DNA of 64,000 nucleotides, from positions 1 to 64,000 of IMG/VR virus record IMGVR_UViG_3300018424_000006; one strand, given 5' to 3'. How positions within the stretch are numbered: the first letter of the stretch is position 1; every line of letters starts with the position of its first letter. Positions 9,026-61,575 of this stretch are shown in pieces. Made by a program: the position numbers and the translations under genes. Under the pieces are notes generated by a model. The model had not been told where the DNA came from. It saw only the letters and a program-made list of their open reading frames with translations, and made no database searches.

Positions 9026-9312
9026 CGTTTCTATCCCTAATTACCGTTACGTTTACCATAGACGTTTGGGGCAAAGGTGTAGGATATGCGGATTGCCCTG
9101 AAGGACAGATCGATAAGTCATTTGTTTATGAGCTGCAGAAGGTTGGTATAGCGGGACTCTATTTCGTTATGGAAGACGGGACCAAGTTCCGTCCCGGCGC
9201 TAGCTGCGATGTAACTTACAGAGAAGTAGATAACGCTACCTACCAACATGTTAAGCAGAAGCTTGAGCGTTACACTTTTGAAAAACCCTATATTTATATC
9301 TTGGATAACTAA
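9007..9312 (+). CDS. Hypothetical exported/membrane protein
   Basis: N-terminal hydrophobic signal-like segment; two Cys. Confidence 0.65.
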   Translation: MSKYFLTFLSLITVTFTIDVWGKGVGYADCPEGQIDKSFVYELQKVGIAGLYFVMEDGTKFRPGASCDVTYREVDNATYQHVKQKLERYTFEKPYIYILDN

Positions 9313-9315
9313 CCC

Positions 9316-10266: not shown

Positions 10267-10278
10267 GGTATTTAGACG

Positions 10279-10695
10279 ATGAGTAACAACGAAGAAGCAG
10301 TAGCTGAAGCTACTATGGATGTTAACCACGATACCGTTGAAAAACTTTCGTTCCTAGAGCGTATCCGTAGACGGAAAGCATACTGGGCCGGCTCAACTAT
10401 CCCATGGTGGTTTCCGTGGCCAAACAAACACTTCACTCTCTATGGGAAAGAATGGACGTCCTATCAGGACTGGGAAATTCCATTTGAAGACCCTGGATGT
10501 ACTCCTGAGGTACAGATTAATTTCTATATTAATCGCCATAGCGGCTTCCATTTCTCGGTTCAGGTAAACGGCTATAGTCATGGCGGTCGTAATCCGATTC
10601 GCTTAGTAGTTAAGCAGCTACGAAGACTGGCTAATATCGATGCGTCTCTTGATGCTCTTAAAGGAGAGTGTCGTAGAGGCCAAAACCCTTATTAG
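10279..10695 (+). CDS. Hypothetical protein
   Basis: SD GAGGT; Trp-rich 138-aa ORF. Confidence 0.75.
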   Translation: MSNNEEAVAEATMDVNHDTVEKLSFLERIRRRKAYWAGSTIPWWFPWPNKHFTLYGKEWTSYQDWEIPFEDPGCTPEVQINFYINRHSGFHFSVQVNGYSHGGRNPIRLVVKQLRRLANIDASLDALKGECRRGQNPY

Positions 10696-15095: not shown

Positions 15096-15115
15096 TATAG
15101 ACAGAGGGATTGTTT

Positions 15116-15430
15116 ATGTTAAGATCACTAATAACAACAATTATATTATCGTGTTTATTAATAGGAGTATGTCGTGCAGATTATTCAATTGAGGTAGGAT
15201 ATATGACAGAAGCCAAAGGCGGTCTCTATTCGGCATGCAGAACTTATCAGGCTACACTAGATAGCTCTGGATTAAACGTCTACTTCAAGTCCAAAATCAA
15301 AGGGGCTAACATTAAGACTATATCTATATCCCCTAAGTTAAAGACTTCTCCATCTATTCTTAGCCTAGATACATATACCAAAACTAAGTGTTGGACTGGA
15401 CCAATACTGACCTTCTCAAGATCTTTCTAA
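15116..15430 (+). CDS. Small secreted hypothetical protein
   Basis: SD GAGGGA before ATG 15116; signal-peptide-like N-terminus; one Cys pair in the mature part. Confidence 0.65.
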   Translation: MLRSLITTIILSCLLIGVCRADYSIEVGYMTEAKGGLYSACRTYQATLDSSGLNVYFKSKIKGANIKTISISPKLKTSPSILSLDTYTKTKCWTGPILTFSRSF

Positions 15431-24056: not shown

Positions 24057-24410
24057 ATGAAATACATACTACCTATGTTGTTGCTGCTAGCCGGCTGTAC
24101 TATTTCGCCTCTGAAATATGAACAACCGCCACAACCTTCCTGTCCGGATGTTTATGTCGAACAGCCAGTCATTAATGTAGAGATTCCTTCTGTAACAGAT
24201 TTCTGTCCGGCAGTTCAAGCCCCAAAGACTGTTTATCGCACCAAGAAGTGTTCTATGCCAGCTCTGATCGCTTTAACTAAAAAGCCTCGTATAGACGTTA
24301 CTCATTATGCCACTAATCCAGATGCGTTGATTGAGCGCTTACTAAAAGACGTGGCTAGTTACGAAAAGATGGTTTCCAAGGCATACGTGGAGTATATGGA
24401 ATGTCAGTAG
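24057..24410 (+). CDS. Outer-membrane lipoprotein (o-spanin-like candidate)
   Basis: Lipobox LLLAG/C; Pro-rich and Cys-containing; SD GGAG. Confidence 0.6.
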   Translation: MKYILPMLLLLAGCTISPLKYEQPPQPSCPDVYVEQPVINVEIPSVTDFCPAVQAPKTVYRTKKCSMPALIALTKKPRIDVTHYATNPDALIERLLKDVASYEKMVSKAYVEYMECQ

Positions 24411-46954: not shown

Positions 46955-46991
46955 AGAGGGTACGGATTTCCGTACCCTCTTTTTTTGCCGT
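46955..46991 (+). terminator. Intrinsic terminator with TGCCGT tail
   Basis: AGAGGGTACGGA/TCCGTACCCTCT stem, T-tract, then GCCGT. Confidence 0.88.
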
Positions 46992-47181: not shown

Positions 47182-50100
47182 ATGCACCTCTCTAATCAAC
47201 TCGAAACCTTGTTAGCCAAAGCATCTCAGGCCTTACAGGAAACGAGCCAAAGTATAAACTCCGTAGATTCTCAGTCGGATAACAACGTTGTTCAGATTGC
47301 TACACTCACAAACCAAATTCAACAGGTTTTAGATCTTCTATCTGGTATTACCAATATTAATGAATTTCTTTCTGACCAAGATATTATCTCGGACTTGGAT
47401 ACTCCAGCACCTCCTGAGAATAATAAATTGGTTCAAGCCTCAACAGTTTGGCAAATCAATAAAGAGCTAGAATCCTTACTAGATACTCTAGCCGCTTTCG
47501 ATGGCGATGCTGATGGCGTCGATTATGTCGAGAATTTAAATTCAGTTATGACTTGGGCTCGGGCCAACAAAGACATACTGGATGCGATGGCACCCGCTAC
47601 GCCAACGCAAACTGGTTTCTTTTCAAAGGAAGACAAAGCCAAGTTAGATGCACTTGAGCAGGGCGCGACTGCGACCAATCTTTCTGACGATGAAACAACG
47701 AATGATTCAGCTACCGCAGCTAGTACTGCATTGACATTCAAATTAAAAACTGCCCTAGATGACCTTGCTCAAACTGTTAGTGACATTCAGGCTAATGGCG
47801 GAGGAGGCGGTGGCGGAGGTTCCATTACGGATGCTGATGGTGCCGCAATCGAATCTGCTCTAGATGCTCGTTATAACAGTACAGCATGGCGTGATGGATT
47901 GTCCGAATGGACAAATACATTACCTACTATAGTCGATATTAATCAGACTACTAAGGCAACTCAAGACCTAATTATTAACTTAGATAATTATGGTTCTGAT
48001 CCTGACGAAGGTCAGACCTTGACGTATACTTGTTCGCCAATGACTAATGTCACATTAGCGGGTTCCATACTGACTTTCAATAGCCCTAATGTAGGTACCG
48101 AAGTATTTACTATTACGACTGACGATGGAGCAGGCGGTGGCGCGAGCGCAACACTAACGATAACGGTTACTCGTTTCGGATATGTTGAAATAGTAGATAA
48201 GACTGAATATGCTGTTCAGGGAATCGCCAAAGTTATTACACTTGGCCCTACTCATGACGATGAGAATGATCAGGCGGTCTATACTGTTACCGGTAGTACA
48301 GATTTCGTAATGGGCCCAGGTACTAACGAAATAACATTCACGGGTACTACTGTTGCTTCCGTTCCTCTTTCTGTACAAGCAGACGATGGTAATGGGAATA
48401 TATCTAATGCTACTATTACCGTTGAAGTAGAAGCGCCAAGTACTAATCCTTGGCCTGTTGTACAGAACGTGTCACCGCAATATGTAGCTAAGGGAGCGAC
48501 CTTTAGTTTAACGCCAGTAATTACTAACCCAGCTACGGCTGGTGAAGTGAACTGGTTTAAAGAGTTTGGGCCAGATGACCTAGAAGTTAATCCTATTACT
48601 GGCGAGATTACGTGGAATACGCCTTCTGATTGGCAAGCAGAATCTTTTCACGTTATTATCAGGGCAGTTAACTTAGATGCAACAGATGGGATGCTTGAAT
48701 TCATACTACACTACGGAAAGACTGCCGGCGATGTAGTTATGGTTGGTCCTAGTCATTCCTATAAGACATGGCAAGAAGCGCATCCTAACCTTGTTTCAGG
48801 ACAATCTATCATTATTGAAGATGGTAGCTATTCTGATTTTGGTATGGGTATAGGCCGTTTTAATAACGGTAACTGGTATCCGCCTTCAGGTACAGCTACG
48901 GCCCTGACATGCGTTATGGCAGAAACAGTGGGCGGTGTTACGCTAACTGGTGATGCAGGCGTTTCATTTGTTCTCTGGAGTGCGGGAAAGAGTGAAGCTC
49001 AGGACATATCCTTTAGCGGGTTATTCGTTAAAGGCGGTCCGTCCATCAATTTCAATGGGGATAGTAACGATAAACTAAATACTCGTGTTAAGCGCATTAA
49101 AACTATTGCCTGTGGTTGTGATGGCGATGACGCCATTCCCATTTATAGTCGTATTGCCGACGACATACTCATTGAAAGCTGCTATGCTTTTGGTGGAGGT
49201 CGCTATAAGATATCGACTAACGAGTCAACTCGTGTAGTTCAGCGTCGTAATTTAGGACGTATGGATAGAACTGATATGGATGGCGTAGAGGACCCCAAAG
49301 GCACATTCATGGCGTACAATACGTGGGAATTCTACTGGTCTAACCTTATTGATCTTGATGCCCTAGATCGTTTCCGTTCCAACGGTGAGATAGTTGGGGC
49401 CTTCGGTACCCCTGTAACAGGTACCGGAACTACACCTGAAGGTTCGTTTGGTATCATTACTACCTGTATCCACCTTAACTCTGAAAATCGTCTTTGTAAC
49501 TTCGATTCCCAACTCTCGTCTGCAGGTGGCCATTCTGACGTCAAGATGGAACATGTTGCAAGTTTCAATATTAAACCGGACTGGGCCTATGGTTATTCAT
49601 GGGGCTCTGGTTGGTTTGACCGGATGAGTATTGTTAATATTCAACCATTGGCTCCTGTTGACAGTGCTATGATAAATACGGGCGGTCGTTACTATTGTCG
49701 AGGCATGACTAACTCGATTATAGATCAGGTTGATATAACTACTAATGGCGGCACTGGTGACTTTTTCCGAGAACTAAATACTGGTCCGGTAGACATACCG
49801 TATAATGGCGGCGTATCCCGTACAGTTGAAAAGTATGGCGTCTATGGTAACAACATAACCAATGTCGATACGGCAGGTATGATTGGTACAGGCGCACAAT
49901 ACGAAATAAATACTACGACGGTTGATGTTTCAGCAGCCTTTGACTACTTGACTCGCGTAAATGACGACCATGCGCTTGCAGGTCAAAAGGGAGCCGAGGT
50001 ACTTTATCTGAAAGGGAAGTCTGGGCGTTTCTTTGGAGACGCCGGATATGATGAAGATACGAAGATTCCTATGTGGCCGTTTCCACTTCAGCATAAGATG

Positions 50101-53100
50101 GCTGAGAAAATGCGTGAGTGGACTTACACTGGACCTACTTATAGTGGTTGGGATTACACTAACCGAACTGTTGGGGCTAGTGAAACGGCAGACGGTAATC
50201 GTGGCGCATCTGCAATTGGTGAGACCATTACCAATTACGTCTGGGGAGCCTTAGGAAAAACAGTACCTCCGTTTAATGTAAAGGCCGTTCCGGAAGACGG
50301 TGGCTGCACGATTGTTTGGGAGAAGCACGCCCCGATTTCTCGTGATACCATTACCGGCTATAGAATTTACGACTACAGTCAGGTAGACGGTTCCTTGAGT
50401 AATCCTCGCACTATTTCGCGAGATTCTCACAGACACCAGATAACCGGTTTATTGAATGGTTTTGATGCAACGTTTGTCGTGACAGCTATTGATTCTGTTA
50501 AAGGGGAGTCGGGATACGGATATCCGGTGACGGTTAGACCGAATGGTACGCCTACGGTCAAGCCTACTATAACTAATGTGACTGGCAACTTAAACCTAAT
50601 TGAAGGTACAAACTTTACGTTAGGGGCGGTAGTTCAGGGTTACGAAACGCTCTCATGGCTACGGAACGATGTTGTTATCAGTTCTGTAACTGAAGAATCG
50701 TATTCGTCCGTAGCCGCTTTGGTCGATGATGGTGCAGTTTATAAAATCCGTGCCGGTAACCCGGTAGGCATTACCGAGGTCGTCATTTCGACACTCTCCG
50801 TAATTGCCGTGGATTCTACTCCTCCGTCTGTCACTATTGCATTAAATGGTGATACGTTAAACATTGGCTTAGTTGATAACCTCTATCAGAAAGCTGATAT
50901 TAGCCTGCAGCTTTTTGCTGATGATACCCCTGTCGGAAACTCGTTTTCTGGCGCAGTAAGTTCCATAGATTTACTAAATGAAAATTTACCTTTGGGTAAC
51001 CTTTCTTTACGTGTGGAAGCCACTGACCCGCAAAACAACACAGGGACGTCTAGCACAGTACAGTATACAGTAGGTAGTCCGATCTTTACTGATGACTTTA
51101 CAGACGCAAGTCAATGGCTTGCTGGTATTTCTGCGGTAGGTAATATTGGTACTGTAACTGAAACTGCTAGAACCTCAAGTGACGTCTGGACGAATACGAC
51201 CGGCTTTACGTTAAAGTGGAAGCAGAAGATCTTGGATCAGATGGGCGATTACGTCCTTTTCAATATGGATATAGGTATCGCTGTAGACGGTAACCGTGCA
51301 GGTTCAGTCCGACTACGTTTTTATAAACGAAGCGGAAGTAACTCCCTTGCCAGCTATACTAGCCGAGCGGGCGTCGCTACAGGCTTTACTGATACGTTTA
51401 ATGCTGGTAACCCTACTTCGGATACTGGCGGTAACGAACCTTTAATTCAGTATGAGGCAACTGCAATAGGCACTACCTTCACGTTAAAGGCAGATGGTGT
51501 AGTTATTCTGACTGAAACCCTACCGGAAGACATCGGACCGTTCGATGGTAGAATTCAATTTGACCCGGATACTGCTGGAGATATTGAAATTTCGGATATA
51601 GTTGCATATGGAGAAGAAATTCCCGTTAATGCTGCGCCTACCGTAGATCCCCAAACAGTAAATGTAGGAGTTGGTCAAAGCCGAGTCATAACTCTCGGAG
51701 AGCTAACGGATTCTGATGGAGATACGTTGGTCTATAGCGTTACAGGTTCAAGCGACTTTGTTGCAGGACCGGGCGCAAACGAAATAACCTTTGAATCAGC
51801 TAGTGCCGGAGTCCATACGCTTACCGTGACTGCTGACGACCAGAAAGGCTTAAGTACTTCAAACACATTAACGGTTATTGTATCCATTCCACGTCCAGTA
51901 AGTCTAAAGTATGCTTTTAGCGGCTGGGCAAGTATGCAGAATAATCTAGGCGGCCAAAATGATGGACTAGATCCTTCCCTCTATAATCTTGTCGGTAAGA
52001 TGATGACTGATAATGGCATTCTTGGCTACGTCAGTGATTTTGAATACCTTCCAGAAGGGTCTCCTGACATTGACGGAACAGTCGCTACTGCACACGCAAA
52101 TTCCACCGATTCCGAAGTATTTATTATTTCGGCCTATCCGGGTTCTGACGGTATTTGTGCAGATCCTGCTACGTCATCTGGCGCTAAGGGCTCCGGTGCC
52201 GCCGGCTGGGTTCAGAGAGTAGTTGATATTGCTACGCTAGCTGAAAGTAACGGCATGCATCCCGTTCTGTTCCAAGCATGGGGTAATGAAAATGCAAAAG
52301 CGGACTGGGGCAATGCTAAACTTAACACCGATGCCATTCTAGGCATTAAACAGATTGGGGTTATTCGCACAGCAGAAATACTCAAAGCAGTGTACGACGA
52401 TACTGCTTCATATGCAACAAACGTTGCCAATGGCAGGACTAAGTACGAACCTCCTGTGGATACCATGTGGTCTGGCGATATCTCAGATACAATTAATGGT
52501 TCTTATGCAATGCTTTATGCAAATGCGCTAGCTACCATGAAATATATTTCGGGAATAAGTGCTGCTGACAACGCATATGTCGTACCAGCGTACTACCAAA
52601 TGCCTGCTGCATTAGTTAGTCTCATTAAGCAGAAGGTAGATGAGATTCAGGTAGAAACAATGAATGTCTACATACCGGTTGGCGTAGCGCCATCTGCAAA
52701 CGACATTAATGTAAACGCATATCAGGGTGATAGCTATGCCTATGATTTAGAGGCATTAACGCTTATTTCTGATGATGTTGCGATTATACCTGCAAACTTT
52801 ACGCTTTCTAGCGCCACTGCTGCTCACTATACCAGCGCTAATATAGCTAACGGTATTTTGACGATAGTGCCCGGGAGTTCTTATGAGGGCCTTTCCCCTA
52901 TTATAGTAACTTATACGGATGCTGATGGAAACATTACACCTTTTAATGTTAACGTCAATATAAGTGCTAAGCCATCTTCAGATGCAGTAAAGGTCTGGAT
53001 AGATTTTGGTAAAGGGTCGGGTAGTGCATTCGGAACCGACGGGAATCTTTATAACCACGCTACTGCACTCGATGGCGGCGGTGAAGTTATAAACCTTATT

Positions 53101-55038
53101 CGTAGAATGGACGCACTTACCACTCAAGGTAACCTACAGGACGTTAATGGTGTCGTAGTAGGGTCAGTTAGTGCATTGACAACGGATATGTACTCTCCGG
53201 GATATGCGTCTCAGACAGATCCGATTGTAGTTGACTATAACCCTGATAGTTACTTTGACGGCTCGTTGGCTACCATACCTAAAGGTACAACTGTATCTTT
53301 CTCTATCAACGGCTTAACGCCGGGAGATAAGTTCGTAGTTGGTATTGGCGGTATGTATCCATATGCAGATGCTACTAACGTAGTAGATGTAAACGTCAAT
53401 GGGGTAACTGGCAGCTATAACTCGTCTCGTCTATCTAACTTGTTCAGTACATGGCAAGATATAGTGACGGTAAATGCAGATGGTAAAATTATCTTTGCAC
53501 TTAGTCAAAATAGTACTGCCGATCGAGGAGGTTTGTCTTATGTTACCTTAGAGAAGCAGGCAGGTTTACCGCCAGCTACTTCTAACTATTCAGCTGGCGA
53601 TCAGGTAATCAATCCTAATATGCCAACGGCCATGCCAGATAAATGGGTTAATGTTGAAGATCCGACTACAGGAACGCGCCTAACGCGTGTAACTGACTCT
53701 AGTACAGACATGCAACTATCTACCCAGGCGTTAAATGGCAGCTCCAGATGGAGTCAAGAAAATGCTGACGGCTCACTTTATATTGCCTTTGGAAGTGACT
53801 TATCGTCGTCTACCGTACTTAGGAAGACTACTGGTGCGGTTGTAGCCTATCTGGCGTCTGATGACTCAGGAGCCGATGCTAGCACTTTAGGTCTAGAGCA
53901 TGAAGTGCGGTGGGATAAGACTGGTAATCACGCAAACAGGGTTTACTTCAGAAGCGGCATGAGTCTATATCAGATTGACGATGTAACTCAAAACGTTAAT
54001 GCAGATCGTTCTAATCCGACTCGCTCAGTAATTAAGGACTTTAGTTCGTTAATTGACTGGCCTGCTGGAACAGAAGCGTTTGATAAGAAAATCTTCAATG
54101 GTCAGAAAGGGGATAGCTCTTTAGATTCCGACCATTGGGCATTTATGGCTGCTTACAATGACGGCGGTACTTGGAGAATTCGTGCTATAGTGCATTATCA
54201 GATTTCTACTGATACTACGCATATTCTTTATCCGTCTGACTTGATAGGTAGTAGCCTAGATTCTACTCAAGCAACTTCCGACTACTTCACTAGACAACCT
54301 AGTGCAGTAGGTATTTCTCCTTTGGCGACTGGTATTGTAGTACACGTTGCTCGTTCAGATACTGGCGTTTTCGAAGACTTAGCCGATACATGGTTGGATG
54401 GTACACACTTGTGGCCATTAGACTTAGATTGGAGGGCATCAAACCCATTTAAGATTTCGATTAGTGATACCAACTCAGGTTGGTGTTGGTCAGCAGACGG
54501 TCGGGAAATGTTTACATACCTAGATGACCGACGGGATATGTTGTGTGCCACTTATATATCTGGTGCATACAAAGGCTATAGCTTACCTAATACTGCAGTA
54601 CCGGGTCAAGATCCGGGAGTAGGTACAATAGACTTTGCTAGACATATTGATCTTGCATATACAGAAATACATTTTAGTCAGATGCCTCAAAGTAAGCCGG
54701 GCTGGGTTTTATTATCCACCTACGATACTAGTGACGAATGGGCCGATGATCAACTAATGATGTTTGAAGTCGTTGACCATAACTCCTCTCCTAATTGGTG
54801 GAGGGTTAGTCCTATGTATAGTAAGTATAGCGGTCAGGCTTTTGATGAAGCTCCTGCGAGCATGTCTTTGGATGGTAATTCTATCTATGTGTCACAGAAC
54901 TGGGGAACTAGTGACGGCGCATCGAATGAAGTATTCCGATATGACTTACCTGAAGATTGGCAGACTACTGCACCTACCACTAACAGTGGTGTTGTATATG
55001 GTGAAGTAATTGAAATAACAGGCGTGGAGGTTTCCTAA
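47182..55038 (+). CDS. Giant multidomain appendage protein (2618 aa): anchor, Ig/cadherin-like repeats, beta-helix, FN3, lectin-like, SGNH-like, lyase-like beta-propeller
   Basis: Shared N-terminal anchor; Gly8 linker at 47797-47820; DxD(G/N)D Ig repeats; parallel beta-helix about 48730-50260; FN3 'PPFNVKAVPEDG'; propeller beginning 'DPTTGTRLTRVTD'. Confidence 0.8.
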   Translation: MHLSNQLETLLAKASQALQETSQSINSVDSQSDNNVVQIATLTNQIQQVLDLLSGITNINEFLSDQDIISDLDTPAPPENNKLVQASTVWQINKELESLLDTLAAFDGDADGVDYVENLNSVMTWARANKDILDAMAPATPTQTGFFSKEDKAKLDALEQGATATNLSDDETTNDSATAASTALTFKLKTALDDLAQTVSDIQANGGGGGGGGSITDADGAAIESALDARYNSTAWRDGLSEWTNTLPTIVDINQTTKATQDLIINLDNYGSDPDEGQTLTYTCSPMTNVTLAGSILTFNSPNVGTEVFTITTDDGAGGGASATLTITVTRFGYVEIVDKTEYAVQGIAKVITLGPTHDDENDQAVYTVTGSTDFVMGPGTNEITFTGTTVASVPLSVQADDGNGNISNATITVEVEAPSTNPWPVVQNVSPQYVAKGATFSLTPVITNPATAGEVNWFKEFGPDDLEVNPITGEITWNTPSDWQAESFHVIIRAVNLDATDGMLEFILHYGKTAGDVVMVGPSHSYKTWQEAHPNLVSGQSIIIEDGSYSDFGMGIGRFNNGNWYPPSGTATALTCVMAETVGGVTLTGDAGVSFVLWSAGKSEAQDISFSGLFVKGGPSINFNGDSNDKLNTRVKRIKTIACGCDGDDAIPIYSRIADDILIESCYAFGGGRYKISTNESTRVVQRRNLGRMDRTDMDGVEDPKGTFMAYNTWEFYWSNLIDLDALDRFRSNGEIVGAFGTPVTGTGTTPEGSFGIITTCIHLNSENRLCNFDSQLSSAGGHSDVKMEHVASFNIKPDWAYGYSWGSGWFDRMSIVNIQPLAPVDSAMINTGGRYYCRGMTNSIIDQVDITTNGGTGDFFRELNTGPVDIPYNGGVSRTVEKYGVYGNNITNVDTAGMIGTGAQYEINTTTVDVSAAFDYLTRVNDDHALAGQKGAEVLYLKGKSGRFFGDAGYDEDTKIPMWPFPLQHKMAEKMREWTYTGPTYSGWDYTNRTVGASETADGNRGASAIGETITNYVWGALGKTVPPFNVKAVPEDGGCTIVWEKHAPISRDTITGYRIYDYSQVDGSLSNPRTISRDSHRHQITGLLNGFDATFVVTAIDSVKGESGYGYPVTVRPNGTPTVKPTITNVTGNLNLIEGTNFTLGAVVQGYETLSWLRNDVVISSVTEESYSSVAALVDDGAVYKIRAGNPVGITEVVISTLSVIAVDSTPPSVTIALNGDTLNIGLVDNLYQKADISLQLFADDTPVGNSFSGAVSSIDLLNENLPLGNLSLRVEATDPQNNTGTSSTVQYTVGSPIFTDDFTDASQWLAGISAVGNIGTVTETARTSSDVWTNTTGFTLKWKQKILDQMGDYVLFNMDIGIAVDGNRAGSVRLRFYKRSGSNSLASYTSRAGVATGFTDTFNAGNPTSDTGGNEPLIQYEATAIGTTFTLKADGVVILTETLPEDIGPFDGRIQFDPDTAGDIEISDIVAYGEEIPVNAAPTVDPQTVNVGVGQSRVITLGELTDSDGDTLVYSVTGSSDFVAGPGANEITFESASAGVHTLTVTADDQKGLSTSNTLTVIVSIPRPVSLKYAFSGWASMQNNLGGQNDGLDPSLYNLVGKMMTDNGILGYVSDFEYLPEGSPDIDGTVATAHANSTDSEVFIISAYPGSDGICADPATSSGAKGSGAAGWVQRVVDIATLAESNGMHPVLFQAWGNENAKADWGNAKLNTDAILGIKQIGVIRTAEILKAVYDDTASYATNVANGRTKYEPPVDTMWSGDISDTINGSYAMLYANALATMKYISGISAADNAYVVPAYYQMPAALVSLIKQKVDEIQVETMNVYIPVGVAPSANDINVNAYQGDSYAYDLEALTLISDDVAIIPANFTLSSATAAHYTSANIANGILTIVPGSSYEGLSPIIVTYTDADGNITPFNVNVNISAKPSSDAVKVWIDFGKGSGSAFGTDGNLYNHATALDGGGEVINLIRRMDALTTQGNLQDVNGVVVGSVSALTTDMYSPGYASQTDPIVVDYNPDSYFDGSLATIPKGTTVSFSINGLTPGDKFVVGIGGMYPYADATNVVDVNVNGVTGSYNSSRLSNLFSTWQDIVTVNADGKIIFALSQNSTADRGGLSYVTLEKQAGLPPATSNYSAGDQVINPNMPTAMPDKWVNVEDPTTGTRLTRVTDSSTDMQLSTQALNGSSRWSQENADGSLYIAFGSDLSSSTVLRKTTGAVVAYLASDDSGADASTLGLEHEVRWDKTGNHANRVYFRSGMSLYQIDDVTQNVNADRSNPTRSVIKDFSSLIDWPAGTEAFDKKIFNGQKGDSSLDSDHWAFMAAYNDGGTWRIRAIVHYQISTDTTHILYPSDLIGSSLDSTQATSDYFTRQPSAVGISPLATGIVVHVARSDTGVFEDLADTWLDGTHLWPLDLDWRASNPFKISISDTNSGWCWSADGREMFTYLDDRRDMLCATYISGAYKGYSLPNTAVPGQDPGVGTIDFARHIDLAYTEIHFSQMPQSKPGWVLLSTYDTSDEWADDQLMMFEVVDHNSSPNWWRVSPMYSKYSGQAFDEAPASMSLDGNSIYVSQNWGTSDGASNEVFRYDLPEDWQTTAPTTNSGVVYGEVIEITGVEVS

Positions 55039-58000
55039 TGCCATTTACGTACATTGTCGATACGAATCCTGCGGTACAAGGTAATGCGGATACATTCGCT
55101 ACCTTTGATGCCTGCATGACTCATATCTATGATACACATGGCGTTTACCTCGATAGTGGTGGTGATGCCGGATTGGTTACGATTAATTTCCGTAACTCAT
55201 CTGGCGTCCCATTAAACGAGTTTGTAGACGTTAATAGGTTCTTCCCTAACGGTACAAACCGTATTGAGATCGTTGGCCAAATGGCCAACGGTTTTCCTGC
55301 GGTTGTAGAAGACTGGGTTGATAACACAGAAACTCTCGTATTCCGAGTCTACGATGACTACATAGATGTTTATGGAGAAACTGAAGACTCGTTTATAATT
55401 CGAGGTGATTTAGCGGTAACCACCGGCAAGGCGCTCTTTTCAGTATCGAAAGATATGTCGAAGTTTGAGCGCATTTCACTTGACGGTGTAGATAGTAGCT
55501 ATTACGCTGGTATAAGCGGAAGTAATACTGCCACCGGCTCTCATCTTAAAATTGTTCGTTGTAAACGTCAGTTTTATGGTGCCATTCGTGCAGGTAATGT
55601 TTCACTTGACCATTGTACCATAAATAACTGTCGTCTTATCCGTAGTTCAGGAATCATCACAAATAGTATTGTAGCAAACATCACTTCTCATTCTGAGAAT
55701 GACGGCTTTATTGATGGCTCGGATTACAATATCTACGATGTTGATAAAGCGACTATAAAATATAACTCAAGTGTAGCGGATACTAGTCTAGTTGATGTAA
55801 ACAGCCAGTTTAGTGTCGACATTGCGGCTAACTTCAACGAAGATACCTTTGGGGCTTATAACCTTAAAGCGGGCTCCGTTGCCGAGAATGCGGATTCTAC
55901 AGGTACCGGTAACCCGGGTGCTGATACGGATGCGTTAGTCGGCGAGCCGCCACAATTAAGTATCTACTTAAATGGCGATACTCTAACTGCGGTAGTTTCG
56001 GATGACGCCACCGCTAACCCTAGCCTACAGCTTTATATAGACGGGGTGGCTCAAGGGAGTGCTCAAACAGCAACCTCTTGGGATATGACTCAGTTTGCTT
56101 TAGCTACTGGTGTTTATAGGTTATCGGTAGAGGCTACGGACGACGACTCTAACTCTGCCGTGTCTAACGAGCGCTACTATTCAGTGGGAGGGATACTTAA
56201 GGTACTTTTCTTAGGTAACTCCTTGACTCAAACACCTGTAGAACCCGCTGGGGTTTCTGACGCACTTTACCATACCGTCCGAAAAATGTTTCAGTCTGTC
56301 GGCTCCGACATTTTTATAGACTGGAGTATGATTGGCGGCGCTACATTTGAAGAGCATTATGGCAGTACTGTTTCAAGATCCAAGATCAGTTCTGGTAACT
56401 ACGATGTTATCTTGATGCAAGGTGAAGGTAACGACTATGCCGATGATGCGTGGTATGATACCTGGTGTAAACCAATGGTTGACGATGCTAAGGCGGCAAA
56501 TACCGACTGGGTTTTCTGGGCACACTGGCATCGCGAGAATGAAACTGATCGATATGCCGATCGACTGGCAAATCAGGTAAATGGCGCGGCACGAATGGGT
56601 TGTGACTTAATTGACACAATCTCTGCATGGCACAACATTCAGGCTAATAACCCTACGTTTGACCTTTATGCAGATAACACCCACCAGAACTTGGCAGGTG
56701 AGTTCATAAACGCCATAGCCATTTACCGTTACCTTACAGGTAATCCATCTTCAACACCGTCTTATGTCCAACCCTTACTTACTACTGATGTAGGTAGTGG
56801 TGGTCTAGGTTATACTACAGCTGATCTTGATATTATCCGAACTCAAGTAGATACGGACATTACAAATCAGTTTGTTAGGACTGGGGTAAATAGCTGTAGC
56901 GTTATAATTACACAACCGTCGGGCGCGATTGACGTCACTGTAGGTACTGAAGTTACTTTCACGGCAACTGCTACAGATAGCTCTACTGGCGATCTGTCAG
57001 CAAATATAGTCTGGAAAGATAATGACGGTGTTACTCTACATACAGGCAATACGTTTTCTACTACAACCCTACCTACTGGTAATTTGCTTATTACTGCAAA
57101 CTGTGTAGGTAGTGATGGAAAGACAACTACTGCCGCACGGTCGGTGAAGGTTCGTACATTAGTCAATTCTGCTCCTGTTACTCAGAAGGGCTATAGGGAA
57201 GTTGATTACCAATCTCCGTTCACTCAGCTTAGTTTAGCAGCTTTGATGACGGATGATAACGATGAACTTGATCTTAATACACTGACGATTACTCAGCAGC
57301 CTCGTAACTGTACGGCTGTGCAGGACGGTCAAACGTTAACTACGTTAAATGTTGACTATTCTGGCACAGAGTTTTATGGTACGGATACCCTAAAGTATAC
57401 AATTGCTGATATGGATGGCGCTGTATCAAACGAGTCTGTCTATGAGATTTACGTTAAGCCGCCACCTGCTTCTACGGGTACCCTTCGGGGCGGCCTGAAT
57501 ATTACAAGAGGCTCTGCCTTTGTAATTGATCTGGAGCGGTACTGGCCTAATGGCGATGCGTCTATGGTGGAGGTCTATGTTGTCGATACTAGTGATGGGA
57601 CTGAATATAAGTGTACCGTTACAGCGAATGCTAAAAACGAGATTACTTGTACAGCACCAAACACAATCGATTTAACTACGACTTTGTCAAACGCAACAAT
57701 TCGAATAAAACCGATAGCCACTCTGGGAAAGGGTGATGGCAGTAGTACGGCTAATACGAATGAGCTGCAGGATCTCAGCTTTAGTATTGCTGCCGGTGCA
57801 GATGGAATTCTTCGTAGTACGCATGAAAATGGTAGCGTACCTTCATTAATAGCGGGGCCATTAAATGTTTATCATTTTGATGGTTCAGTAGCAGTAGGAG
57901 GTTTGTTTGATAGGCCGGGTGTAGTAGTAACGGCCAATGACGCTACATGGGAAGTGATTGAAGAAGACGCCTTAGGTGGTAGCTTTGAGTACTTTACTGG

Positions 58001-58112
58001 TGGCGGTTATTCCTATAGTGCTGGTAGCACTGCAGGTATCGCTTACTTTAAATACCTTGTTCGTGACGGTAATGAAATCGCTATTGCAGTGGAACGCATT
58101 ACAGTTACATAA
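55038..58112 (+). CDS. Beta-helix + Ig + SGNH/GDSL esterase + Ig/PKD multidomain protein
   Basis: Block I 'VLFLGNSLT', block V 'ADNTHQNLAG' (DxxH); TAATG overlap with the upstream gene. Confidence 0.75.
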   Translation: MPFTYIVDTNPAVQGNADTFATFDACMTHIYDTHGVYLDSGGDAGLVTINFRNSSGVPLNEFVDVNRFFPNGTNRIEIVGQMANGFPAVVEDWVDNTETLVFRVYDDYIDVYGETEDSFIIRGDLAVTTGKALFSVSKDMSKFERISLDGVDSSYYAGISGSNTATGSHLKIVRCKRQFYGAIRAGNVSLDHCTINNCRLIRSSGIITNSIVANITSHSENDGFIDGSDYNIYDVDKATIKYNSSVADTSLVDVNSQFSVDIAANFNEDTFGAYNLKAGSVAENADSTGTGNPGADTDALVGEPPQLSIYLNGDTLTAVVSDDATANPSLQLYIDGVAQGSAQTATSWDMTQFALATGVYRLSVEATDDDSNSAVSNERYYSVGGILKVLFLGNSLTQTPVEPAGVSDALYHTVRKMFQSVGSDIFIDWSMIGGATFEEHYGSTVSRSKISSGNYDVILMQGEGNDYADDAWYDTWCKPMVDDAKAANTDWVFWAHWHRENETDRYADRLANQVNGAARMGCDLIDTISAWHNIQANNPTFDLYADNTHQNLAGEFINAIAIYRYLTGNPSSTPSYVQPLLTTDVGSGGLGYTTADLDIIRTQVDTDITNQFVRTGVNSCSVIITQPSGAIDVTVGTEVTFTATATDSSTGDLSANIVWKDNDGVTLHTGNTFSTTTLPTGNLLITANCVGSDGKTTTAARSVKVRTLVNSAPVTQKGYREVDYQSPFTQLSLAALMTDDNDELDLNTLTITQQPRNCTAVQDGQTLTTLNVDYSGTEFYGTDTLKYTIADMDGAVSNESVYEIYVKPPPASTGTLRGGLNITRGSAFVIDLERYWPNGDASMVEVYVVDTSDGTEYKCTVTANAKNEITCTAPNTIDLTTTLSNATIRIKPIATLGKGDGSSTANTNELQDLSFSIAAGADGILRSTHENGSVPSLIAGPLNVYHFDGSVAVGGLFDRPGVVVTANDATWEVIEEDALGGSFEYFTGGGYSYSAGSTAGIAYFKYLVRDGNEIAIAVERITVT

Positions 58113-58126
58113 ATGGAGTTTGAAAA

Positions 58127-59878
58127 ATGAAACGTTTAATCCAGCTTTTGGTTTGGTCTATTTCTTTAACCATTATGTCAGAAGCAAGTGCGCTTAAACT
58201 AAACTCCGGTAACAGTACCACAGTGGCCCGTGGGGCCACTGTATCTGTATCGGCCGGGAAAGTTTATTATGTTAGGCCGGGTGGAGGGAATGACACTCAA
58301 TGTACTGGCCTTGCTGATGTTGACTATGACGGTAGTGGGACAGGAGAAGCTTGTGCTTTTTCTACTCCATTCTACGCCCTTGGGTCTGGCGACGTAGGCC
58401 TTAAAATGGTTGGGGGTGATACACTAATAATTGCTGACGGTAATTATGATATTGGGTACGGTGCAAAAGGTACTGAAGGCTTAAGTTGTAGTACGTCTTG
58501 GGCTTGGTCATGCCATTTAAGTGCTATTCCCTCAGGAACCCCCGGAAGGCCAACGCGAATACTTGGAGCTAACTATAAAACAGGTTGTGCAACCAGCCCT
58601 AAGTTTATAGGTATAGAACGGGCCGAAGCAATTCTTAACTTAGAGGATTCCAACTTTGTTGAAGTTCAATGCCTTGAGCTAACGGATGATGAAGAATGTG
58701 GACAAGGACATCTCTCTACTCCTTATGGAATTGGGGTCGCTGCGGCATGTGCAGGAGAGTATCCATTCGGCCGGTGGGCACGTAATGGAATCTATGCGGC
58801 GAGATCCGACAATGTTTATCTGAAAGATATCCATATCCACGGAACAGGCTCTAACGGACTCTATTCGCATACCCTATCAAACTGGCATCTAGATAATGTT
58901 GATATCATTGGTGTTGCTAGCGCAGGTTGGTCAGGTGATGCCGGCGGCAACCCTACCAACAATACGGGTTATTTTAGATGGTGGAATAGCGAAATTAGCT
59001 GGAGTGGCTGCATAGAGTCTAAAACACAAAATGGTTATATGCTAGATGCTAGCTGTACTGGTCAGAATGGTGGCAACTATTCAGACGGTATCGGTTTCAG
59101 TAAAACAGGCGGTAATTACCATTTTAAAAATATGCTAGTCCATCACAATGTTCAGGACGGCATAGACCTACTCTATCTTGACGGCGAAGTAGGGACTGAA
59201 CTGCTCGTTGAGGATTCTTTATTTTACGGGAACGGTGGTAACGGACTAAAGTCAGGACCTACATATAGCGGACAGCTCACTCGTGACAGTACGATAATCG
59301 CTAACTGTAGTGAGATGGGGGATAGTAAACGCTGGGTAGCTGCCGGTACAAACACAATGTGTCGGGCAGGCGGTGGTCCTATTAGTGGACGAGGAGTTTA
59401 TGAACGCGTCTCTATTTATACAAATGGCGATGGAATTTTCTCTACTCAATGCCGTTATGAAAAATGTGGCAATGTCCACTTTATAGACTCTATCTTATTT
59501 GCCGGTGATGAAGTAGACTGGACTGGTGGTGATGATACTAGGACAGTTGAGAAAGCGGCATTAGGCTGGAACGATGCAGCTGCCAACCCGGCCTCGGAAT
59601 GGAGGTTTACGAATACCATAGTTTGGGACCCAAAAGGCACCCTAGCTAACGGAGTGGTGTATTTCGTAAATGGGGTAGAAACGACAATAACCGATAACTG
59701 TCAGGTATCTAGTTTTAAGGATGATACGTTAGACCTTACTGGCTGTCAAGACCCCGGCTTCACCGCATTCCCCGGAGGAGCAGATGGACCACTATACTGG
59801 AATGACGTAGAGTCTTTAGAGATAGATCCTAGTAGTCAGTTCTTTGGAAAAGAAATAGGCGATTGGAGAAGACAGTAA
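58127..59878 (+). CDS. Secreted right-handed beta-helix protein, PL9-like polysaccharide lyase
   Basis: Sec signal MKRLIQLLVWSISLTIMSEASA|; 16 Cys; 'SDGI', 'HNVQDGIDL' and 'GNGGNGLKSG' resemble PL9 Ca-binding and catalytic-Lys motifs. Confidence 0.65.
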   Translation: MKRLIQLLVWSISLTIMSEASALKLNSGNSTTVARGATVSVSAGKVYYVRPGGGNDTQCTGLADVDYDGSGTGEACAFSTPFYALGSGDVGLKMVGGDTLIIADGNYDIGYGAKGTEGLSCSTSWAWSCHLSAIPSGTPGRPTRILGANYKTGCATSPKFIGIERAEAILNLEDSNFVEVQCLELTDDEECGQGHLSTPYGIGVAAACAGEYPFGRWARNGIYAARSDNVYLKDIHIHGTGSNGLYSHTLSNWHLDNVDIIGVASAGWSGDAGGNPTNNTGYFRWWNSEISWSGCIESKTQNGYMLDASCTGQNGGNYSDGIGFSKTGGNYHFKNMLVHHNVQDGIDLLYLDGEVGTELLVEDSLFYGNGGNGLKSGPTYSGQLTRDSTIIANCSEMGDSKRWVAAGTNTMCRAGGGPISGRGVYERVSIYTNGDGIFSTQCRYEKCGNVHFIDSILFAGDEVDWTGGDDTRTVEKAALGWNDAAANPASEWRFTNTIVWDPKGTLANGVVYFVNGVETTITDNCQVSSFKDDTLDLTGCQDPGFTAFPGGADGPLYWNDVESLEIDPSSQFFGKEIGDWRRQ

Positions 59879-61575
59879 TGGGACAAACACTTAGAGTCGG
59901 CTCGGCTCAAGCTCATACGAATATTATTTCAGCACTAACGGCTCTAGGTGATATTGCCGGTACTGGAGAAAACATCATCTTGGTGGATGCTGGGTATAGC
60001 ACAACTGAAGATTTGGTTTTAGGTAGCTATATATCGAACTCTGGATCTGGAGACTTCATCCGTATTTCTGGAGACAGTGGAAGGTTTACCCTTACACCCT
60101 CCGTTGATTCGATTGAACTAGATGCTACAGATTGTATCTTAGAGAATGTCGATATAGTTACAGGGATAGCTAACCAAACGGCAGTACGACTAACCGGGAC
60201 CAACGTTCTCCTTAGACATTATTCTATTACACGCAATGCAAATGGATATTGTATTAGTGGTACTGGGGGCTCCGGAACGATTGAAGACGGTATCCATTAC
60301 GGAGATATCTCTTATCAAGCAAGGACTCTCCCTACAGCCAGAAGAATAACATGCGGCCCTTCCGATTACGGGCTTCATGTAACGACAGCCGAAGACTGTT
60401 TGGTATTTGATACGTCATTTAGTGACGATATAAATGCCACTACAGTAACCAACTGTGCGACGTCAGATACATCTGGTACATCTCCGTATCAGAACATAGT
60501 TCCGGCAACAGAGTTGGTGGACCCGACAAATAACGACTATACCTTAAAGGCCGATTCTCAGCTCATTGGTAAGGGTGTTACTGGGTTCAGTATCGGCGGA
60601 GACCAAACGACAGGCTATACTGCCCCAGCCACGCTCTCCTCTCTAACTATTAATAGCATTACCCAAACCACCGCCACAGCGAACTTAGATACAGATTTTG
60701 GAGACGGAAGTCTTTACTGGGTTTTAGTTACTGATGGAAGCAGTCCTTCAGTAGACCAGATTAAAGCTGGTACTAATGAAGACGACACTGTAGCAGCGTT
60801 AAGTGGTAGTCAAGCTGTAGGCGGAGTGGGCGCGCAAATTGTCAGTCTGACAGGTTTGACGCTCTATACTGACTACGTTATCTTTATCGTACATGCAAGA
60901 ACGGCAGTCTCTAACTCTAATATCCTTACGGCGGCGTTTCAGAGCGCAGATACTCCAAGACCGGTAATATCTAGTCTGAGTGGCTCAGTTGTTGAAGGAG
61001 AATCTTTATTGATAACCTGTACCGCAGCCGGAACATCTAGCGGAAAGGTTACTATAGGGGGAGTACAACAACGCGTCACTAGTTGGAGTCCAACTTCTAT
61101 AACAATTAATATAGCGGCTGGCGATCAAGCGTTTGGAGTAAAAGATCTTTTAGTGGAAGACGCTGGAGGTATTATATCTCGTCCTTACTCCGTAGAGTTA
61201 AAGCCAGGAGCTACCTTTACTTATACCGACTTAACCAATCCCGGGTCAGGTCCGGAACACCTATTTCAAGGTGCTTTCCCTGCAGTTAAAACTGGTGATC
61301 AGGTTATCTTTGAAAAAGTAACAAATCTGTCCCATGGCGTATATGTCGGGGAAGATGGCATTTTCTATTTAATGGGAGCAGGCGGGGTAGGAACTACCCA
61401 AACCTTTAAGATAAAGGTTTTCTTCAACGACTTATCAAGATGGTCAAATGAAGCTACAGTGACAGTTAATGAAGTAGTGGCACAAGTGGTTTTTGATAAT
61501 AATCTTCAACACGAGCCAGTGGCGGTTGAAGGCTATGACTTCGAGTTAACACTGGATGGAGTTCAGGTATCATGA
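59878..61575 (+). CDS. Beta-helix + FN3 + IPT/TIG multidomain protein
   Basis: Start ATG 59878 (TAATG overlap); 'DPTNNDYTLKADSQLIGKG' helix cap; FN3 'LTGLTLYTDY'; IPT 'VTSWSPTSITI'. Confidence 0.7.
   Translation: MGQTLRVGSAQAHTNIISALTALGDIAGTGENIILVDAGYSTTEDLVLGSYISNSGSGDFIRISGDSGRFTLTPSVDSIELDATDCILENVDIVTGIANQTAVRLTGTNVLLRHYSITRNANGYCISGTGGSGTIEDGIHYGDISYQARTLPTARRITCGPSDYGLHVTTAEDCLVFDTSFSDDINATTVTNCATSDTSGTSPYQNIVPATELVDPTNNDYTLKADSQLIGKGVTGFSIGGDQTTGYTAPATLSSLTINSITQTTATANLDTDFGDGSLYWVLVTDGSSPSVDQIKAGTNEDDTVAALSGSQAVGGVGAQIVSLTGLTLYTDYVIFIVHARTAVSNSNILTAAFQSADTPRPVISSLSGSVVEGESLLITCTAAGTSSGKVTIGGVQQRVTSWSPTSITINIAAGDQAFGVKDLLVEDAGGIISRPYSVELKPGATFTYTDLTNPGSGPEHLFQGAFPAVKTGDQVIFEKVTNLSHGVYVGEDGIFYLMGAGGVGTTQTFKIKVFFNDLSRWSNEATVTVNEVVAQVVFDNNLQHEPVAVEGYDFELTLDGVQVS

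What the first reader, a model, noticed from the sequence alone, without database searches (positions are those of the whole stretch)
58127..59878. Sec-exported, disulfide-rich PL9-like lyase embedded in a virion-fibre operon
Seen: a classical signal peptide (MKR, hydrophobic core, ASA cleavage site) and 16 Cys arranged as neighbouring pairs, while the flanking genes have no signal. Known: virions assemble in the cytoplasm, so an exported protein cannot join before lysis. Inference: it folds in the periplasm and either strips capsule/EPS to aid release or block superinfection, or docks on virions at or after lysis. Alternatively it is a recently captured bacterial gene.
Basis: partly seen in the sequence, partly recalled or inferred. 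Interest (0 to 1): 0.68.

Follow-up and report, generated by a model that had tools for sequence, protein, structure and literature searches.

The report
Exported lyase-like enzyme among phage fibres
A giant phage from a salt marsh carries, in the middle of its tail-fibre genes, a sugar-chain-cutting enzyme built to be exported out of the cytoplasm, and related phages carry the same oddity, so how or whether such an enzyme meets the virus particle is an open, testable question.

Summary
ORF 58127-59878 (+) encodes 583 aa. It has a good RBS and a classical signal peptide (MKR, 12-14 hydrophobic residues, ASA|LK). A 23-residue linker and one right-handed beta-helix domain follow. It has 16 Cys (2.7% against 0.83% for the proteome) and is the only large ORF of the 220-kb phage with a signal.

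Nearly all of about 50 relatives have a signal peptide directly before the conserved YYVRxDGG start, and 12 Cys are conserved as pairs.

"PL9-like" is supported as distant homology, not membership. The PL9 Pfam model misses it. A profile-profile comparison gives 97.7% probability and aligns its SDGIG, NVQDGID and GNGLK motifs with the PL9 calcium ligands and lysine base.

It is not a recent capture:
- GC3 equals the genome mean.
- Four phage copies form one clade.
- They travel with a fibre-tip domain and a translationally coupled downstream gene.

Sister genes sit in other phage structural modules. In cultured Tunturiibacter phages whole runs of "tail fibre" genes carry signals.

Most likely it is a Sec-exported, disulfide-bonded depolymerase acting as a free enzyme. 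Docking on virions after lysis is not excluded. Nothing about export or activity is shown experimentally.

The parts
58115..58118 (+). Shine-Dalgarno GGAG, 8 nt before the ATG
   Evidence: read directly
58127..58192 (+). Signal peptide, residues 1-22: MKR, hydrophobic core L4-M17, ASA at -3..-1
   Evidence: Homologues carry signals of the same build but unrelated sequence.
58193..58261 (+). Linker of the mature protein, residues 23-45. Semi-conserved in the four cassette phages, absent from bacterial and other phage relatives, disordered in the model.
58262..59875 (+). Single right-handed parallel beta-helix domain, residues 46-583. It has 16 Cys and no anchor, carbohydrate-binding or chaperone domain.
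   Evidence: AF2 model pLDDT 81.6, pTM 0.84. Fold searches. hhalign spans YYVR to the C-terminal cap.
59081..59095 (+). SDGIG motif: Asp320, aligned with the first PL9 calcium-ligand Asp (ADGFG)
59147..59167 (+). NVQDGID motif: Asn341, Asp344 and Asp347 aligned with PL9 NSDDGFD. Gln343 stands where PL9 has a further Asp.
59237..59251 (+). GNGLK motif: Lys375 aligned with the PL9 catalytic-base Lys (GNGFK)
   Evidence: PL9 mechanism from PMC6627557.
57759..58106 (+). C-terminal domain of about 115 aa ('X') of the upstream 1024-aa protein. It travels with the lyase gene in the three other phage contigs (34-46% identity; in L017 it is a separate 123-aa protein).
55038..58112 (+). Upstream 1024-aa gene with no signal. 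Its N-terminal 350 aa are paralogous to the 378-aa gene at 63593.
59878..61575 (+). Downstream 565-aa gene (P0053) with no signal. Its true start is the ATG at 59878, overlapping the lyase stop (TAATG), with GGAG at 59865-59868. It is conserved next to the lyase gene in all four phage contigs.
46955..46980 (+). Strong intrinsic-terminator-like hairpin (11 bp stem, T-run) that closes the preceding unit. No comparable one follows before the window ends.
47182..55038 (+). 2618-aa fibre gene, first gene of the unit that holds the lyase. It shares a 190-aa N-terminal anchor domain with three other fibre genes.
41814..46937 (+). 1707-aa fibre or spike with a C-terminal Peptidase_G2 autoproteolytic chaperone domain. 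It marks the region as a virion-fibre module.

Best explanation
The gene encodes a pre-protein of a phage-borne lineage of PL9-like, calcium-dependent beta-elimination polysaccharide lyases. It is transcribed late with the fibre genes as part of one tightly packed unit. The Sec system takes it across the inner membrane and signal peptidase I cleaves it after Ala22. It folds in the oxidising periplasm with six to eight disulfides, which its family needs and which the cytoplasm cannot supply. It then works as a free, single-domain depolymerase on an acidic host surface glycan (capsule, EPS or similar). It may act first on nascent or periplasmic polymer, and after lysis on the matrix and debris around the burst cell. 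That would free progeny and destroy decoy receptors. It belongs to a swappable host-range cassette (fibre-tip domain X, lyase, downstream protein P0053), so its specificity is probably matched to the glycan that those fibre parts recognise. Shown here: the signal-peptide anatomy, the conserved Cys pairs, the beta-helix model, homology to PL9 with aligned catalytic residues, the operon position, the conserved cassette and long residence in phages. Inferred: export, cleavage, disulfides, lyase activity, substrate, and that it is not pre-assembled into virions.
For: Signal anatomy and RBS. It is the only large signal-bearing ORF and the most Cys-rich one in the genome. About 45 of 52 homologues have their own signal peptides directly before YYVRxDGG, and the four cassette copies keep the n-h-c build although the sequence has diverged. 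Twelve Cys are conserved as concordant pairs. The model is a beta-helix with pLDDT 81.6; PL9 structures rank first in Foldseek and tie for first at Z about 25 in VIA-align. hhalign against six true PF22842 proteins gives 97.7% probability and E 1.5e-12 over 368 columns, with D320, D344, D347 and K375 on the PL9 Asp/Asp/Asp/Lys columns. The PL9 mechanism is taken from PMC6627557. There is no particle-binding domain: the helix starts 23 residues after the cleavage site, there is no similarity to the 190-aa anchor shared by four fibres, and there is no chaperone domain. In the sister phage copies the helix starts right at the cleavage site. The gene is embedded in an operon and coupled to the next gene. 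The region is present in four salt-marsh metatranscriptome libraries.
Against: No experiment supports export or activity. SignalP could not be run. One PL9 calcium-ligand position is Gln, not Asp, and the PL9 Pfam model does not match, so the chemistry or substrate may differ. Conserved synteny with a fibre-tip domain, translational coupling to a signal-less neighbour, and a phage-specific linker after the cleavage site could equally point to physical association with the fibre. In Tunturiibacter podophages nearly all spike-like genes carry signals, which is hard to reconcile with 'never part of the virion'. RNA-library contigs do not prove transcription.
Confidence: 0.55

Rival explanations
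1. Two-compartment assembly. The enzyme is exported and oxidatively folded as above, but it is a true virion part. At or after lysis the mature protein docks on a fibre made in the cytoplasm. Docking might use its phage-specific N-terminal linker or C-terminal end, and the target might be the X domain of the upstream protein or P0053.
For: The X domain, the lyase and P0053 are inherited together in four contigs whose other compared genes are unrelated to this phage or differently built. Coupling by a TAATG overlap is kept in three of the four. A 23-residue linker is found only in this clade. In the Tunturi_2 podophage gp12, gp13, gp14, gp16 and gp17, about 15 kb in a row, all carry signals and 1.3-2.7% Cys, and these are the only genes annotated as fibre or spike there.
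Against: No known tailed phage adds a Sec-exported protein to its particle (my own knowledge; literature searches found none). There is no recognisable anchor domain. The complex prediction of X with the mature enzyme gave no verdict, which counts neither way. The 'virion structural' labels in the Tunturi genomes come from fold-based annotation, not proteomics.
Confidence: 0.2
2. The hydrophobic N-terminus is not used as an export signal in the phage. The protein stays in the cytoplasm and joins the fibre like an ordinary tailspike. This could happen through an uncleaved N-terminal helix, or through an isoform started at the internal Met17 that lacks the signal.
For: The position in the fibre operon. 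An in-frame ATG at codon 17 would remove the hydrophobic core.
Against: The n-h-c build is kept under sequence divergence in all phage copies. Twelve conserved Cys pairs make no sense in a reducing cytoplasm. There is no RBS before codon 17, and internal starts are not conserved in the homologues. A 12-14-residue core is of signal length, not anchor length.
Confidence: 0.1
3. An auxiliary metabolic gene: a secreted lyase that degrades environmental polyuronates (plant or algal pectin-like or alginate-like matter in the marsh) to feed the infected cell. It would be unrelated to host recognition.
For: Secreted CAZymes with signal peptides are reported in viral genomes; 5% of prophage CAZymes have one (PMC13507307). 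The bacterial relatives are scattered in ordinary chromosomal contexts. The habitat is a salt marsh.
Against: The gene is embedded in, and coupled within, a late structural operon of a lytic-type jumbo phage. It has no promoter or terminator of its own. It is co-inherited with fibre parts. Sister copies also sit in structural modules.
Confidence: 0.08
4. A non-catalytic exported beta-helix: an adhesin, or a binder that masks the receptor to block superinfection.
For: Beta-helix adhesins (pertactin, PfbA) appear among the fold matches. Exported receptor-masking proteins encoded beside receptor-binding genes are known (T5 Llp, Cor; my own knowledge).
Against: The Asp/Asp/Asp/Lys constellation is conserved at 90-100% across the family and aligns with the PL9 active site. 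Late co-expression with fibres fits exclusion poorly.
Confidence: 0.05

Closest known systems
Polysaccharide lyase family 9 (Pel9A/PelL of Dickeya, BT4170 of Bacteroides; Pfam PF22842)
   Same: Sec signal, single right-handed beta-helix, and the same three motifs on successive coils (DG[FI]G, NxxDG[FI]D, GNG[FL]K). These carry the calcium ligands and the lysine base. Profile-profile probability is 97.7%.
   Different: The family HMM does not match. One ligand Asp is Gln or Ser. There are six or more extra conserved disulfides, a longer helix (about 540 aa against about 400), an unknown substrate, and the gene is phage-encoded.
Phage tailspike or tail-fibre depolymerases (e.g. K5A lyase, LKA1 gp49, CBA120 TSPs, K64-1 depolymerases)
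   Same: Beta-helix glycan-cleaving fold (Z 19-22), encoded among fibre genes, probably matched to the host glycan.
   Different: Those have no signal peptide. They have an N-terminal particle-binding domain, are trimeric and fold in the cytoplasm. This one has a signal and many disulfides, and it has no anchor domain and no sign of a trimerisation or chaperone module.
Secreted bacterial matrix lyases such as Vibrio cholerae RbmB, and periplasmic depolymerases such as VexL
   Same: Signal peptide, monomeric beta-helix, cleavage of the cell's own exopolysaccharide. Structural matches are Z 23.4 (RbmB) and 19.3 (VexL).
   Different: Those are host genes of biofilm or capsule loci. This one is a phage late gene inside a fibre operon.
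Soluble, non-virion phage depolymerases (e.g. PghP of Bacillus phage phiNIT1) and viral 'AMG' CAZymes with signal peptides
   Same: Phage-encoded glycan-degrading enzyme that acts free of the particle. Signal peptides occur in a minority of viral CAZymes (PMC13507307).
   Different: PghP-type enzymes are released by lysis, not exported (my own knowledge). AMG CAZymes are usually morons outside structural operons. Here the gene is coupled to fibre genes and inherited with them.
Exported proteins encoded beside receptor-binding genes: T5 Llp, Cor of phi80/N15, lambda Lom (my own knowledge)
   Same: Sec-exported product of a gene embedded in the tail-fibre region. Proposed role in dealing with the receptor on the infected cell and its debris.
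   Different: Those are small lipoproteins or outer-membrane proteins that mask a protein receptor. This is a 60-kDa enzyme without a lipobox.

Membership tests
CAZy PL9 / Pfam PF22842 Pel9A-like beta-helix | Match to the family profile above its curated cut-off | tested here: not met
   Pfam scan: only PF13229 at 21.5 bits, below its cut-off of 25.9, and no PF22842 hit at E<=0.1. Six-frame search of the whole phage with PF22842: no match at E<=10. Bacterial genomes that hold family members also give none.
CAZy PL9 / Pfam PF22842 Pel9A-like beta-helix | Right-handed parallel beta-helix of about 10 coils | tested here: met
   AF2 model pLDDT 81.6. 5olr and 1ru4 are the top Foldseek hits. 1ru4 scores Z 24.8 and 5olq Z 23.9, tied with other beta-helix families.
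CAZy PL9 / Pfam PF22842 Pel9A-like beta-helix | Detectable homology to bona fide members | tested here: met
   hhalign of A1 (48 sequences) against A4 (6 proteins scoring 74-276 bits on PF22842): probability 97.7%, E 1.5e-12, 368 columns. Atlas feature search ranks PF22842 clusters first at 0.96 (a lead only).
CAZy PL9 / Pfam PF22842 Pel9A-like beta-helix | Calcium site of Asp residues on two successive coils, and a Lys base on the next coil | tested here: met
   D320, D344, D347 and K375 are conserved at 90-100% in the family. They align with the invariant D200, D227, D230 and K264 of the PL9 set. The spacing 24/3/28 compares with 24/4/41 in PpPel9a (PMC6627557). The further PL9 Asp (D226 of L099) is Gln343 here.
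CAZy PL9 / Pfam PF22842 Pel9A-like beta-helix | Beta-elimination activity on a polyuronate | not testable with these tools
   Needs an enzyme assay.
Sec/SPase I signal peptide | Positive n-region, uncharged hydrophobic h-region of 7-15 residues, small residues at -3 and -1, no lipobox, no twin-arginine | tested here: met
   MKR; L4-M17; A-S-A|L. The h-region was found by my own scan. SignalP was not available.
Sec/SPase I signal peptide | Actual export and cleavage | not testable with these tools
   Supported only indirectly by conserved signals in homologues and conserved Cys pairs.
Virion-bound tailspike depolymerase | N-terminal particle-binding or anchor domain | tested here: not met
   The first helix strand starts at residue 46, and residues 20-39 are disordered. 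There is no similarity to the 190-aa anchor shared by ORFs 36508, 41814, 47182 and 64823, nor to the phrog_2163-type N-domain.
Virion-bound tailspike depolymerase | C-terminal trimerisation or intramolecular chaperone module | tested here: not met
   No Peptidase_G2 or S74 hit, unlike the 1707-aa neighbour. The helix runs to the C-terminal cap. The oligomeric state itself was not tested.
Virion-bound tailspike depolymerase | Presence in purified particles | not testable with these tools
   The phage is uncultured. The homologues in Tunturi phages are labelled structural by Phold only.
Receptor-masking lipoproteins (Llp/Cor type) | Lipobox with Cys at +1 | tested here: not met
   No Cys in residues 1-58.

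The most novel reading that the evidence does not exclude
Some tailed phages finish their particles outside the cytoplasm. Spike-like depolymerases are exported by Sec, folded with disulfides in the periplasm, and added to the fibres only when lysis mixes the compartments. The jumbo-phage cassette (fibre-tip domain X, exported lyase, P0053) and the Tunturiibacter podophages, where nearly every spike-like gene has a signal peptide, would be examples of this two-compartment assembly.
Probability: 0.17. Interest if true: 0.85.

Novelty: new variant of a known kind. Interest (0 to 1): 0.6.

Why it matters
Phage depolymerases are taken to be cytoplasmic, particle-bound trimers or lysis-released soluble enzymes. 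Here a lineage of phage genes keeps a Sec signal and a full set of disulfide cysteines while sitting inside structural operons. It appears in a jumbo myophage, an E217-like myophage fragment, a T7-like module, other phage-like contigs and cultured Acidobacteria phages. If these are free enzymes, phages routinely use the host's export and oxidative-folding machinery to make extracellular-grade depolymerases. Genome annotation by fold ('tail fibre', 'virion structural protein') then mislabels them, and host-range prediction from 'receptor-binding proteins' is affected. If they are particle parts, virion assembly has an extracytoplasmic step that has not been described. Either answer can be obtained with the cultured Tunturi phages. 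The family is also a new, well-defined sister group of PL9 with an unknown substrate.

Tried and rejected
- Complex prediction: the mature enzyme (residues 23-583) with the upstream X domain scored 0.19 and 0.01 against a mark of 0.32. The verdict was 'no answer', so it is not used as evidence either way.
- Fold of the downstream protein P0053 from a 4-row alignment: pLDDT 58, pTM 0.36. This is too poor to search with, so no fold search was run. The Atlas look-alikes only hint at an N-terminal beta-helix plus Ig/TIG domains.
- PHROGs: no family for the target or its four neighbours.
- NCBIfam: none.
- PDB by sequence: none for the single protein. With the profile there were only short beta-helix-repeat matches.
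- Megablast of 55-64 kb against cultured phages: nothing.
- Viral-contig scan with P0053: nothing. Word search with P0053: only itself and one weak hit.
- X, P0053 and the neighbouring fibre parts are not found beside the more distant phage copies or in the Tunturi loci. The three-part cassette is therefore limited to the four-member clade.
- 'Recent capture' is rejected.
- The internal start at Met17 was considered and judged unlikely.
- BFVD fold search gave only generic beta-helix matches with TM of 0.46 or less.
- Three literature searches for signal-bearing phage depolymerases or fibres found no described case. This is absence in that library, not proof.
- The large representative-protein search was not used, because the family was already well populated.
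- No alternative genetic code was needed.
Full report
**Where the window lies.** The window is the first 64 kb of a 219,819-bp virus record with direct terminal repeats, rated complete. It has 41% G+C. Its SbcC-like protein (3594-6038) finds only 26-28%-identical relatives, in phiKZ-like jumbo phages of Vibrio, Pseudomonas, Erwinia and Xanthomonas. Runs that hold the stretch are salt-marsh metagenomes and metatranscriptomes. No cultured phage is close at the DNA level.

**The observation.**
- ORF 58127-59878 (+) gives 583 aa. GGAG sits 8 nt before the ATG, and the upstream stop is 14 nt away.
- The N-terminus is MKR, then an uncharged hydrophobic core (L4-M17), then SEASA|LKLNSG. This is the n-h-c build of an SPase I signal, with no lipobox and no twin-arginine.
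- There are 16 Cys, all in the mature part. That is 2.74% against 0.83% for the proteome, the highest of all ORFs of 250 aa or more.
- My n/h-region scan of about 224 ORFs flags 13 N-terminal hydrophobic segments. Twelve are in ORFs of 203 aa or fewer, and this is the only large one. None of the fibre-region neighbours is flagged, and their N-termini are plainly polar.

**The family.**
- A word-indexed search found 52 proteins. About 45 have their own signal peptide, with unrelated sequence and the same build. In most it ends directly before a conserved YYVRxDGG.
- Twelve of the 16 Cys are kept in 40-48 of 48 aligned members. Presence is perfectly concordant for 59/76, 121/129, 191/208, 295/310 and 394/412. 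This is what neighbouring disulfides predict.
- A scan of one genome per species found 435 loci. They occur in Omnitrophota, Acidobacteriota, Lysobacterales, Planctomycetales, Chloroflexota, Moritella, Colwellia and others. All match residues of about 40-440 at 35-44% identity.
- Two bacterial copies examined sit in ordinary chromosomal surroundings.

**Fold and chemistry.**
- The AF2 model (pLDDT 81.6, pTM 0.84) shows a signal helix, a disordered stretch (residues 20-39), and one right-handed beta-helix from residue 46 to the C-terminus.
- Foldseek ranks the two PL9 structures first (5olr, 1ru4), but with TM of only 0.36-0.51.
- The exhaustive aligner ties Pel9A (Z 24.8) with a glycoside hydrolase, the AlgE4 epimerase, RbmB and many tailspikes at Z 20-25. 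Fold alone therefore does not single out PL9.
- The PL9 Pfam model PF22842 does not match the protein or anything else in the phage. It also does not match the bacterial genomes that carry family members.
- I fetched six proteins that do score 74-276 bits on PF22842 from 301 genomes and aligned them.
- I compared the two alignments profile to profile. The result was 97.7% probability and E 1.5e-12 over 368 columns, from the YYV start to the C-terminal cap.
- The three invariant PL9 motifs line up with three family-conserved motifs:

| PL9 motif | This protein | Residues here |
|---|---|---|
| ADGFG | SDGIG | D320 |
| NSDDGFD | NVQDGID | N341, D344, D347 |
| GNGFK | GNGLK | K375 |

- PL9 enzymes bind the catalytic calcium with Asp residues on coils 5 and 6, and use a Lys on coil 7 as the base (PMC6627557). 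One further PL9 Asp is Gln343 here, and Ser in the family consensus.
The protein is not a PL9 member by the family's own model.

**The surroundings are a real fibre module.**
- The 1707-aa gene (41814-46937) ends in a Peptidase_G2 autoproteolytic chaperone domain (E 2e-54) and matches pre-neck appendage proteins.
- Four genes (36508, 41814, 47182, 64823) share a 190-aa N-terminal domain. Three others share a phrog_2163-type N-domain.
- A strong terminator-like hairpin at 46955-46980 closes the preceding unit. From 47182 on, the genes abut or overlap, and no comparable terminator appears before the window ends.
- The next gene starts at the ATG at 59878, overlapping the lyase stop (TAATG), with its own GGAG inside the lyase's last codons. 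Homologues and independent gene calls confirm that start.
- Contigs from four RNA libraries cover the gene at 100% identity, and two bridge the upstream junction. This fits transcription but does not prove it.

**Not a recent capture, but a travelling cassette.**
- GC3 of the gene (0.365) equals the genome mean (0.358), and its codon usage is unremarkable.
- Three full-length relatives (44-48% identity) are all on phage-like contigs. One is a 184.7-kb contig with similar giant genes (L004). One is a 10-kb contig with tail terminator, sheath-like and tail-chaperone genes (L006). One is a 3.5-kb fragment (L017).
- With corrected starts, all four copies carry signal peptides.
- In all four, the gene is followed by a P0053 homologue (32-47% identity; fused to a long Ig-repeat protein in L004). 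It is preceded by the same domain of about 105 aa, 'X': 45-46% identical at the C-terminus of unrelated or differently built proteins, and 34% identical as a separate 123-aa protein in L017.
- The other L006 genes compared have no match in this phage.
- The four copies form one clade (SH-aLRT 99) on a long stem in a quick maximum-likelihood tree. The careful search did not finish.
- The pattern resembles the swapping of a fibre tip together with its downstream accessory genes, as in known host-range cassettes (my own knowledge of T4 gp37/gp38 and P2 H/G).

**The theme recurs in other phages.**
- Rows nearest the clade are also phage-borne. All are signal-bearing, Cys-rich and placed just after a large gene.
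  - P0012 (783 aa, 51 Cys) lies between T7 gp13-like and gp14-like genes.
  - P0008 lies in a phage-like contig with a primase.
  - P0048 and P0044 lie in contigs with an SU10-adaptor-like gene.
- In these four the helix starts right at the predicted cleavage site, with no room for an anchor.
- The only cultured phages with a homologue are Tunturiibacter phages Tunturi_1, _2 and _4.
  - In Tunturi_2 the helix lies inside gp17, a 1280-aa protein with 34 Cys that starts with a textbook signal peptide.
  - gp12, gp13 ('tail fiber'), gp14 ('pectin lyase') and gp16 also start with signal peptides. gp113 and gp114 of Tunturi_4 do too.
  - Their 'virion structural' labels come from fold-based annotation (Phold), not from proteomics.

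**Interpretation.**
- The enzyme family is natively extracytoplasmic and held together by many disulfides. A phage that wants to use it must send it through Sec into an oxidising compartment. That explains why the signal is kept under selection in every phage copy.
- The protein has no particle-binding domain, and the sister copies have no linker at all. The simplest reading is a free depolymerase made late, exported, and released at lysis, or active on periplasmic polymer before that. Its specificity would be matched to the neighbouring fibre parts. I put this at about 0.55.
- The co-inherited X domain, the coupled neighbour, the clade-specific linker and the Tunturi genomes keep the bolder reading alive, namely docking on the particle after lysis (about 0.2).
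- The one complex prediction I could run gave no verdict.
- Cytoplasmic retention, an auxiliary metabolic role and a non-catalytic binder are less likely, for the reasons given under the rivals.

**Limits.**
- No signal-peptide predictor was available.
- Model coordinates could not be read, so the disulfide pairs are inferred from spacing and co-occurrence.
- The host is unknown.
- Export, cleavage, disulfides, activity and substrate are all inferred.

Noticed in passing
L002/L111 (Tunturiibacter phage Tunturi_2, PP885685.1 9802-22744), L105 (Tunturi_1), L106 (Tunturi_4): In these cultured phages a run of consecutive large genes all begin with classical signal peptides and have 1.3-2.7% Cys. 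The genes are annotated hypothetical, tail fiber, pectin lyase or tail spike, and virion structural protein: gp12, gp13, gp14, gp16 and gp17 in Tunturi_2, and gp113 and gp114 in Tunturi_4. The labels are fold-based, not proteomic.
   Followed up: partly
window 59863-59880: The mechanical ORF list starts the downstream gene at TTG 59863. Homologues and other gene calls show that the real start is ATG 59878, overlapping the lyase stop codon (TAATG), with GGAG at 59865-59868.
   Followed up: yes
window 24057-24410 (+): 117-aa ORF starting MKYILPMLLLLAGC. This is a lipoprotein-type signal with a lipobox, so a second exported product: possibly an o-spanin-like or receptor-masking lipoprotein. It implies a diderm host.
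   Followed up: no
window 15110-15430 (+) and 9007-9312 (+): Two small ORFs (106 and 101 aa) with signal-like N-termini; the first has 4 Cys. Function unknown.
   Followed up: no
window 36508, 41814, 47182 and G000 64823 (all +): Four fibre genes of 344, 1707, 2618 and 892 aa share a 190-aa N-terminal domain (27-42% identity). This is presumably a common attachment domain for a multi-fibre apparatus.
   Followed up: partly
window 61572-63593 vs 47182-55038; 55038-58112 vs 63593-64729: The 673-aa protein repeats the last 550 aa of the 2618-aa fibre at 51% identity. The 378-aa protein resembles the N-terminal 350 aa of the 1024-aa protein. A two-gene unit thus appears duplicated, with the lyase cassette lying between the copies.
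   Followed up: partly
window 46955-46980 (+): Very strong terminator-like hairpin (11-bp stem with 7 G-C pairs, then a T-run) right after the 1707-aa fibre gene.
   Followed up: no
G000 117675-119348 (+), outside the window: Second most Cys-rich large ORF of the phage (557 aa, 15 Cys, 2.69%), with no signal-like N-terminus by my scan. Not examined.
   Followed up: no
L107 (GCA_034680565.1 contig, 8001-10352): A 783-aa family member with a signal peptide and 51 Cys sits between T7 gp13-like and gp14-like internal-virion-protein genes of a podophage-like contig. This is an unusual place for any exported protein.
   Followed up: partly
window 57000-61500 in runs X3-X6: The region occurs at 100% identity in four salt-marsh metatranscriptome libraries from four studies' worth of samples. 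The phage was therefore present, and probably active, in situ. DNA carry-over is not excluded.
   Followed up: partly
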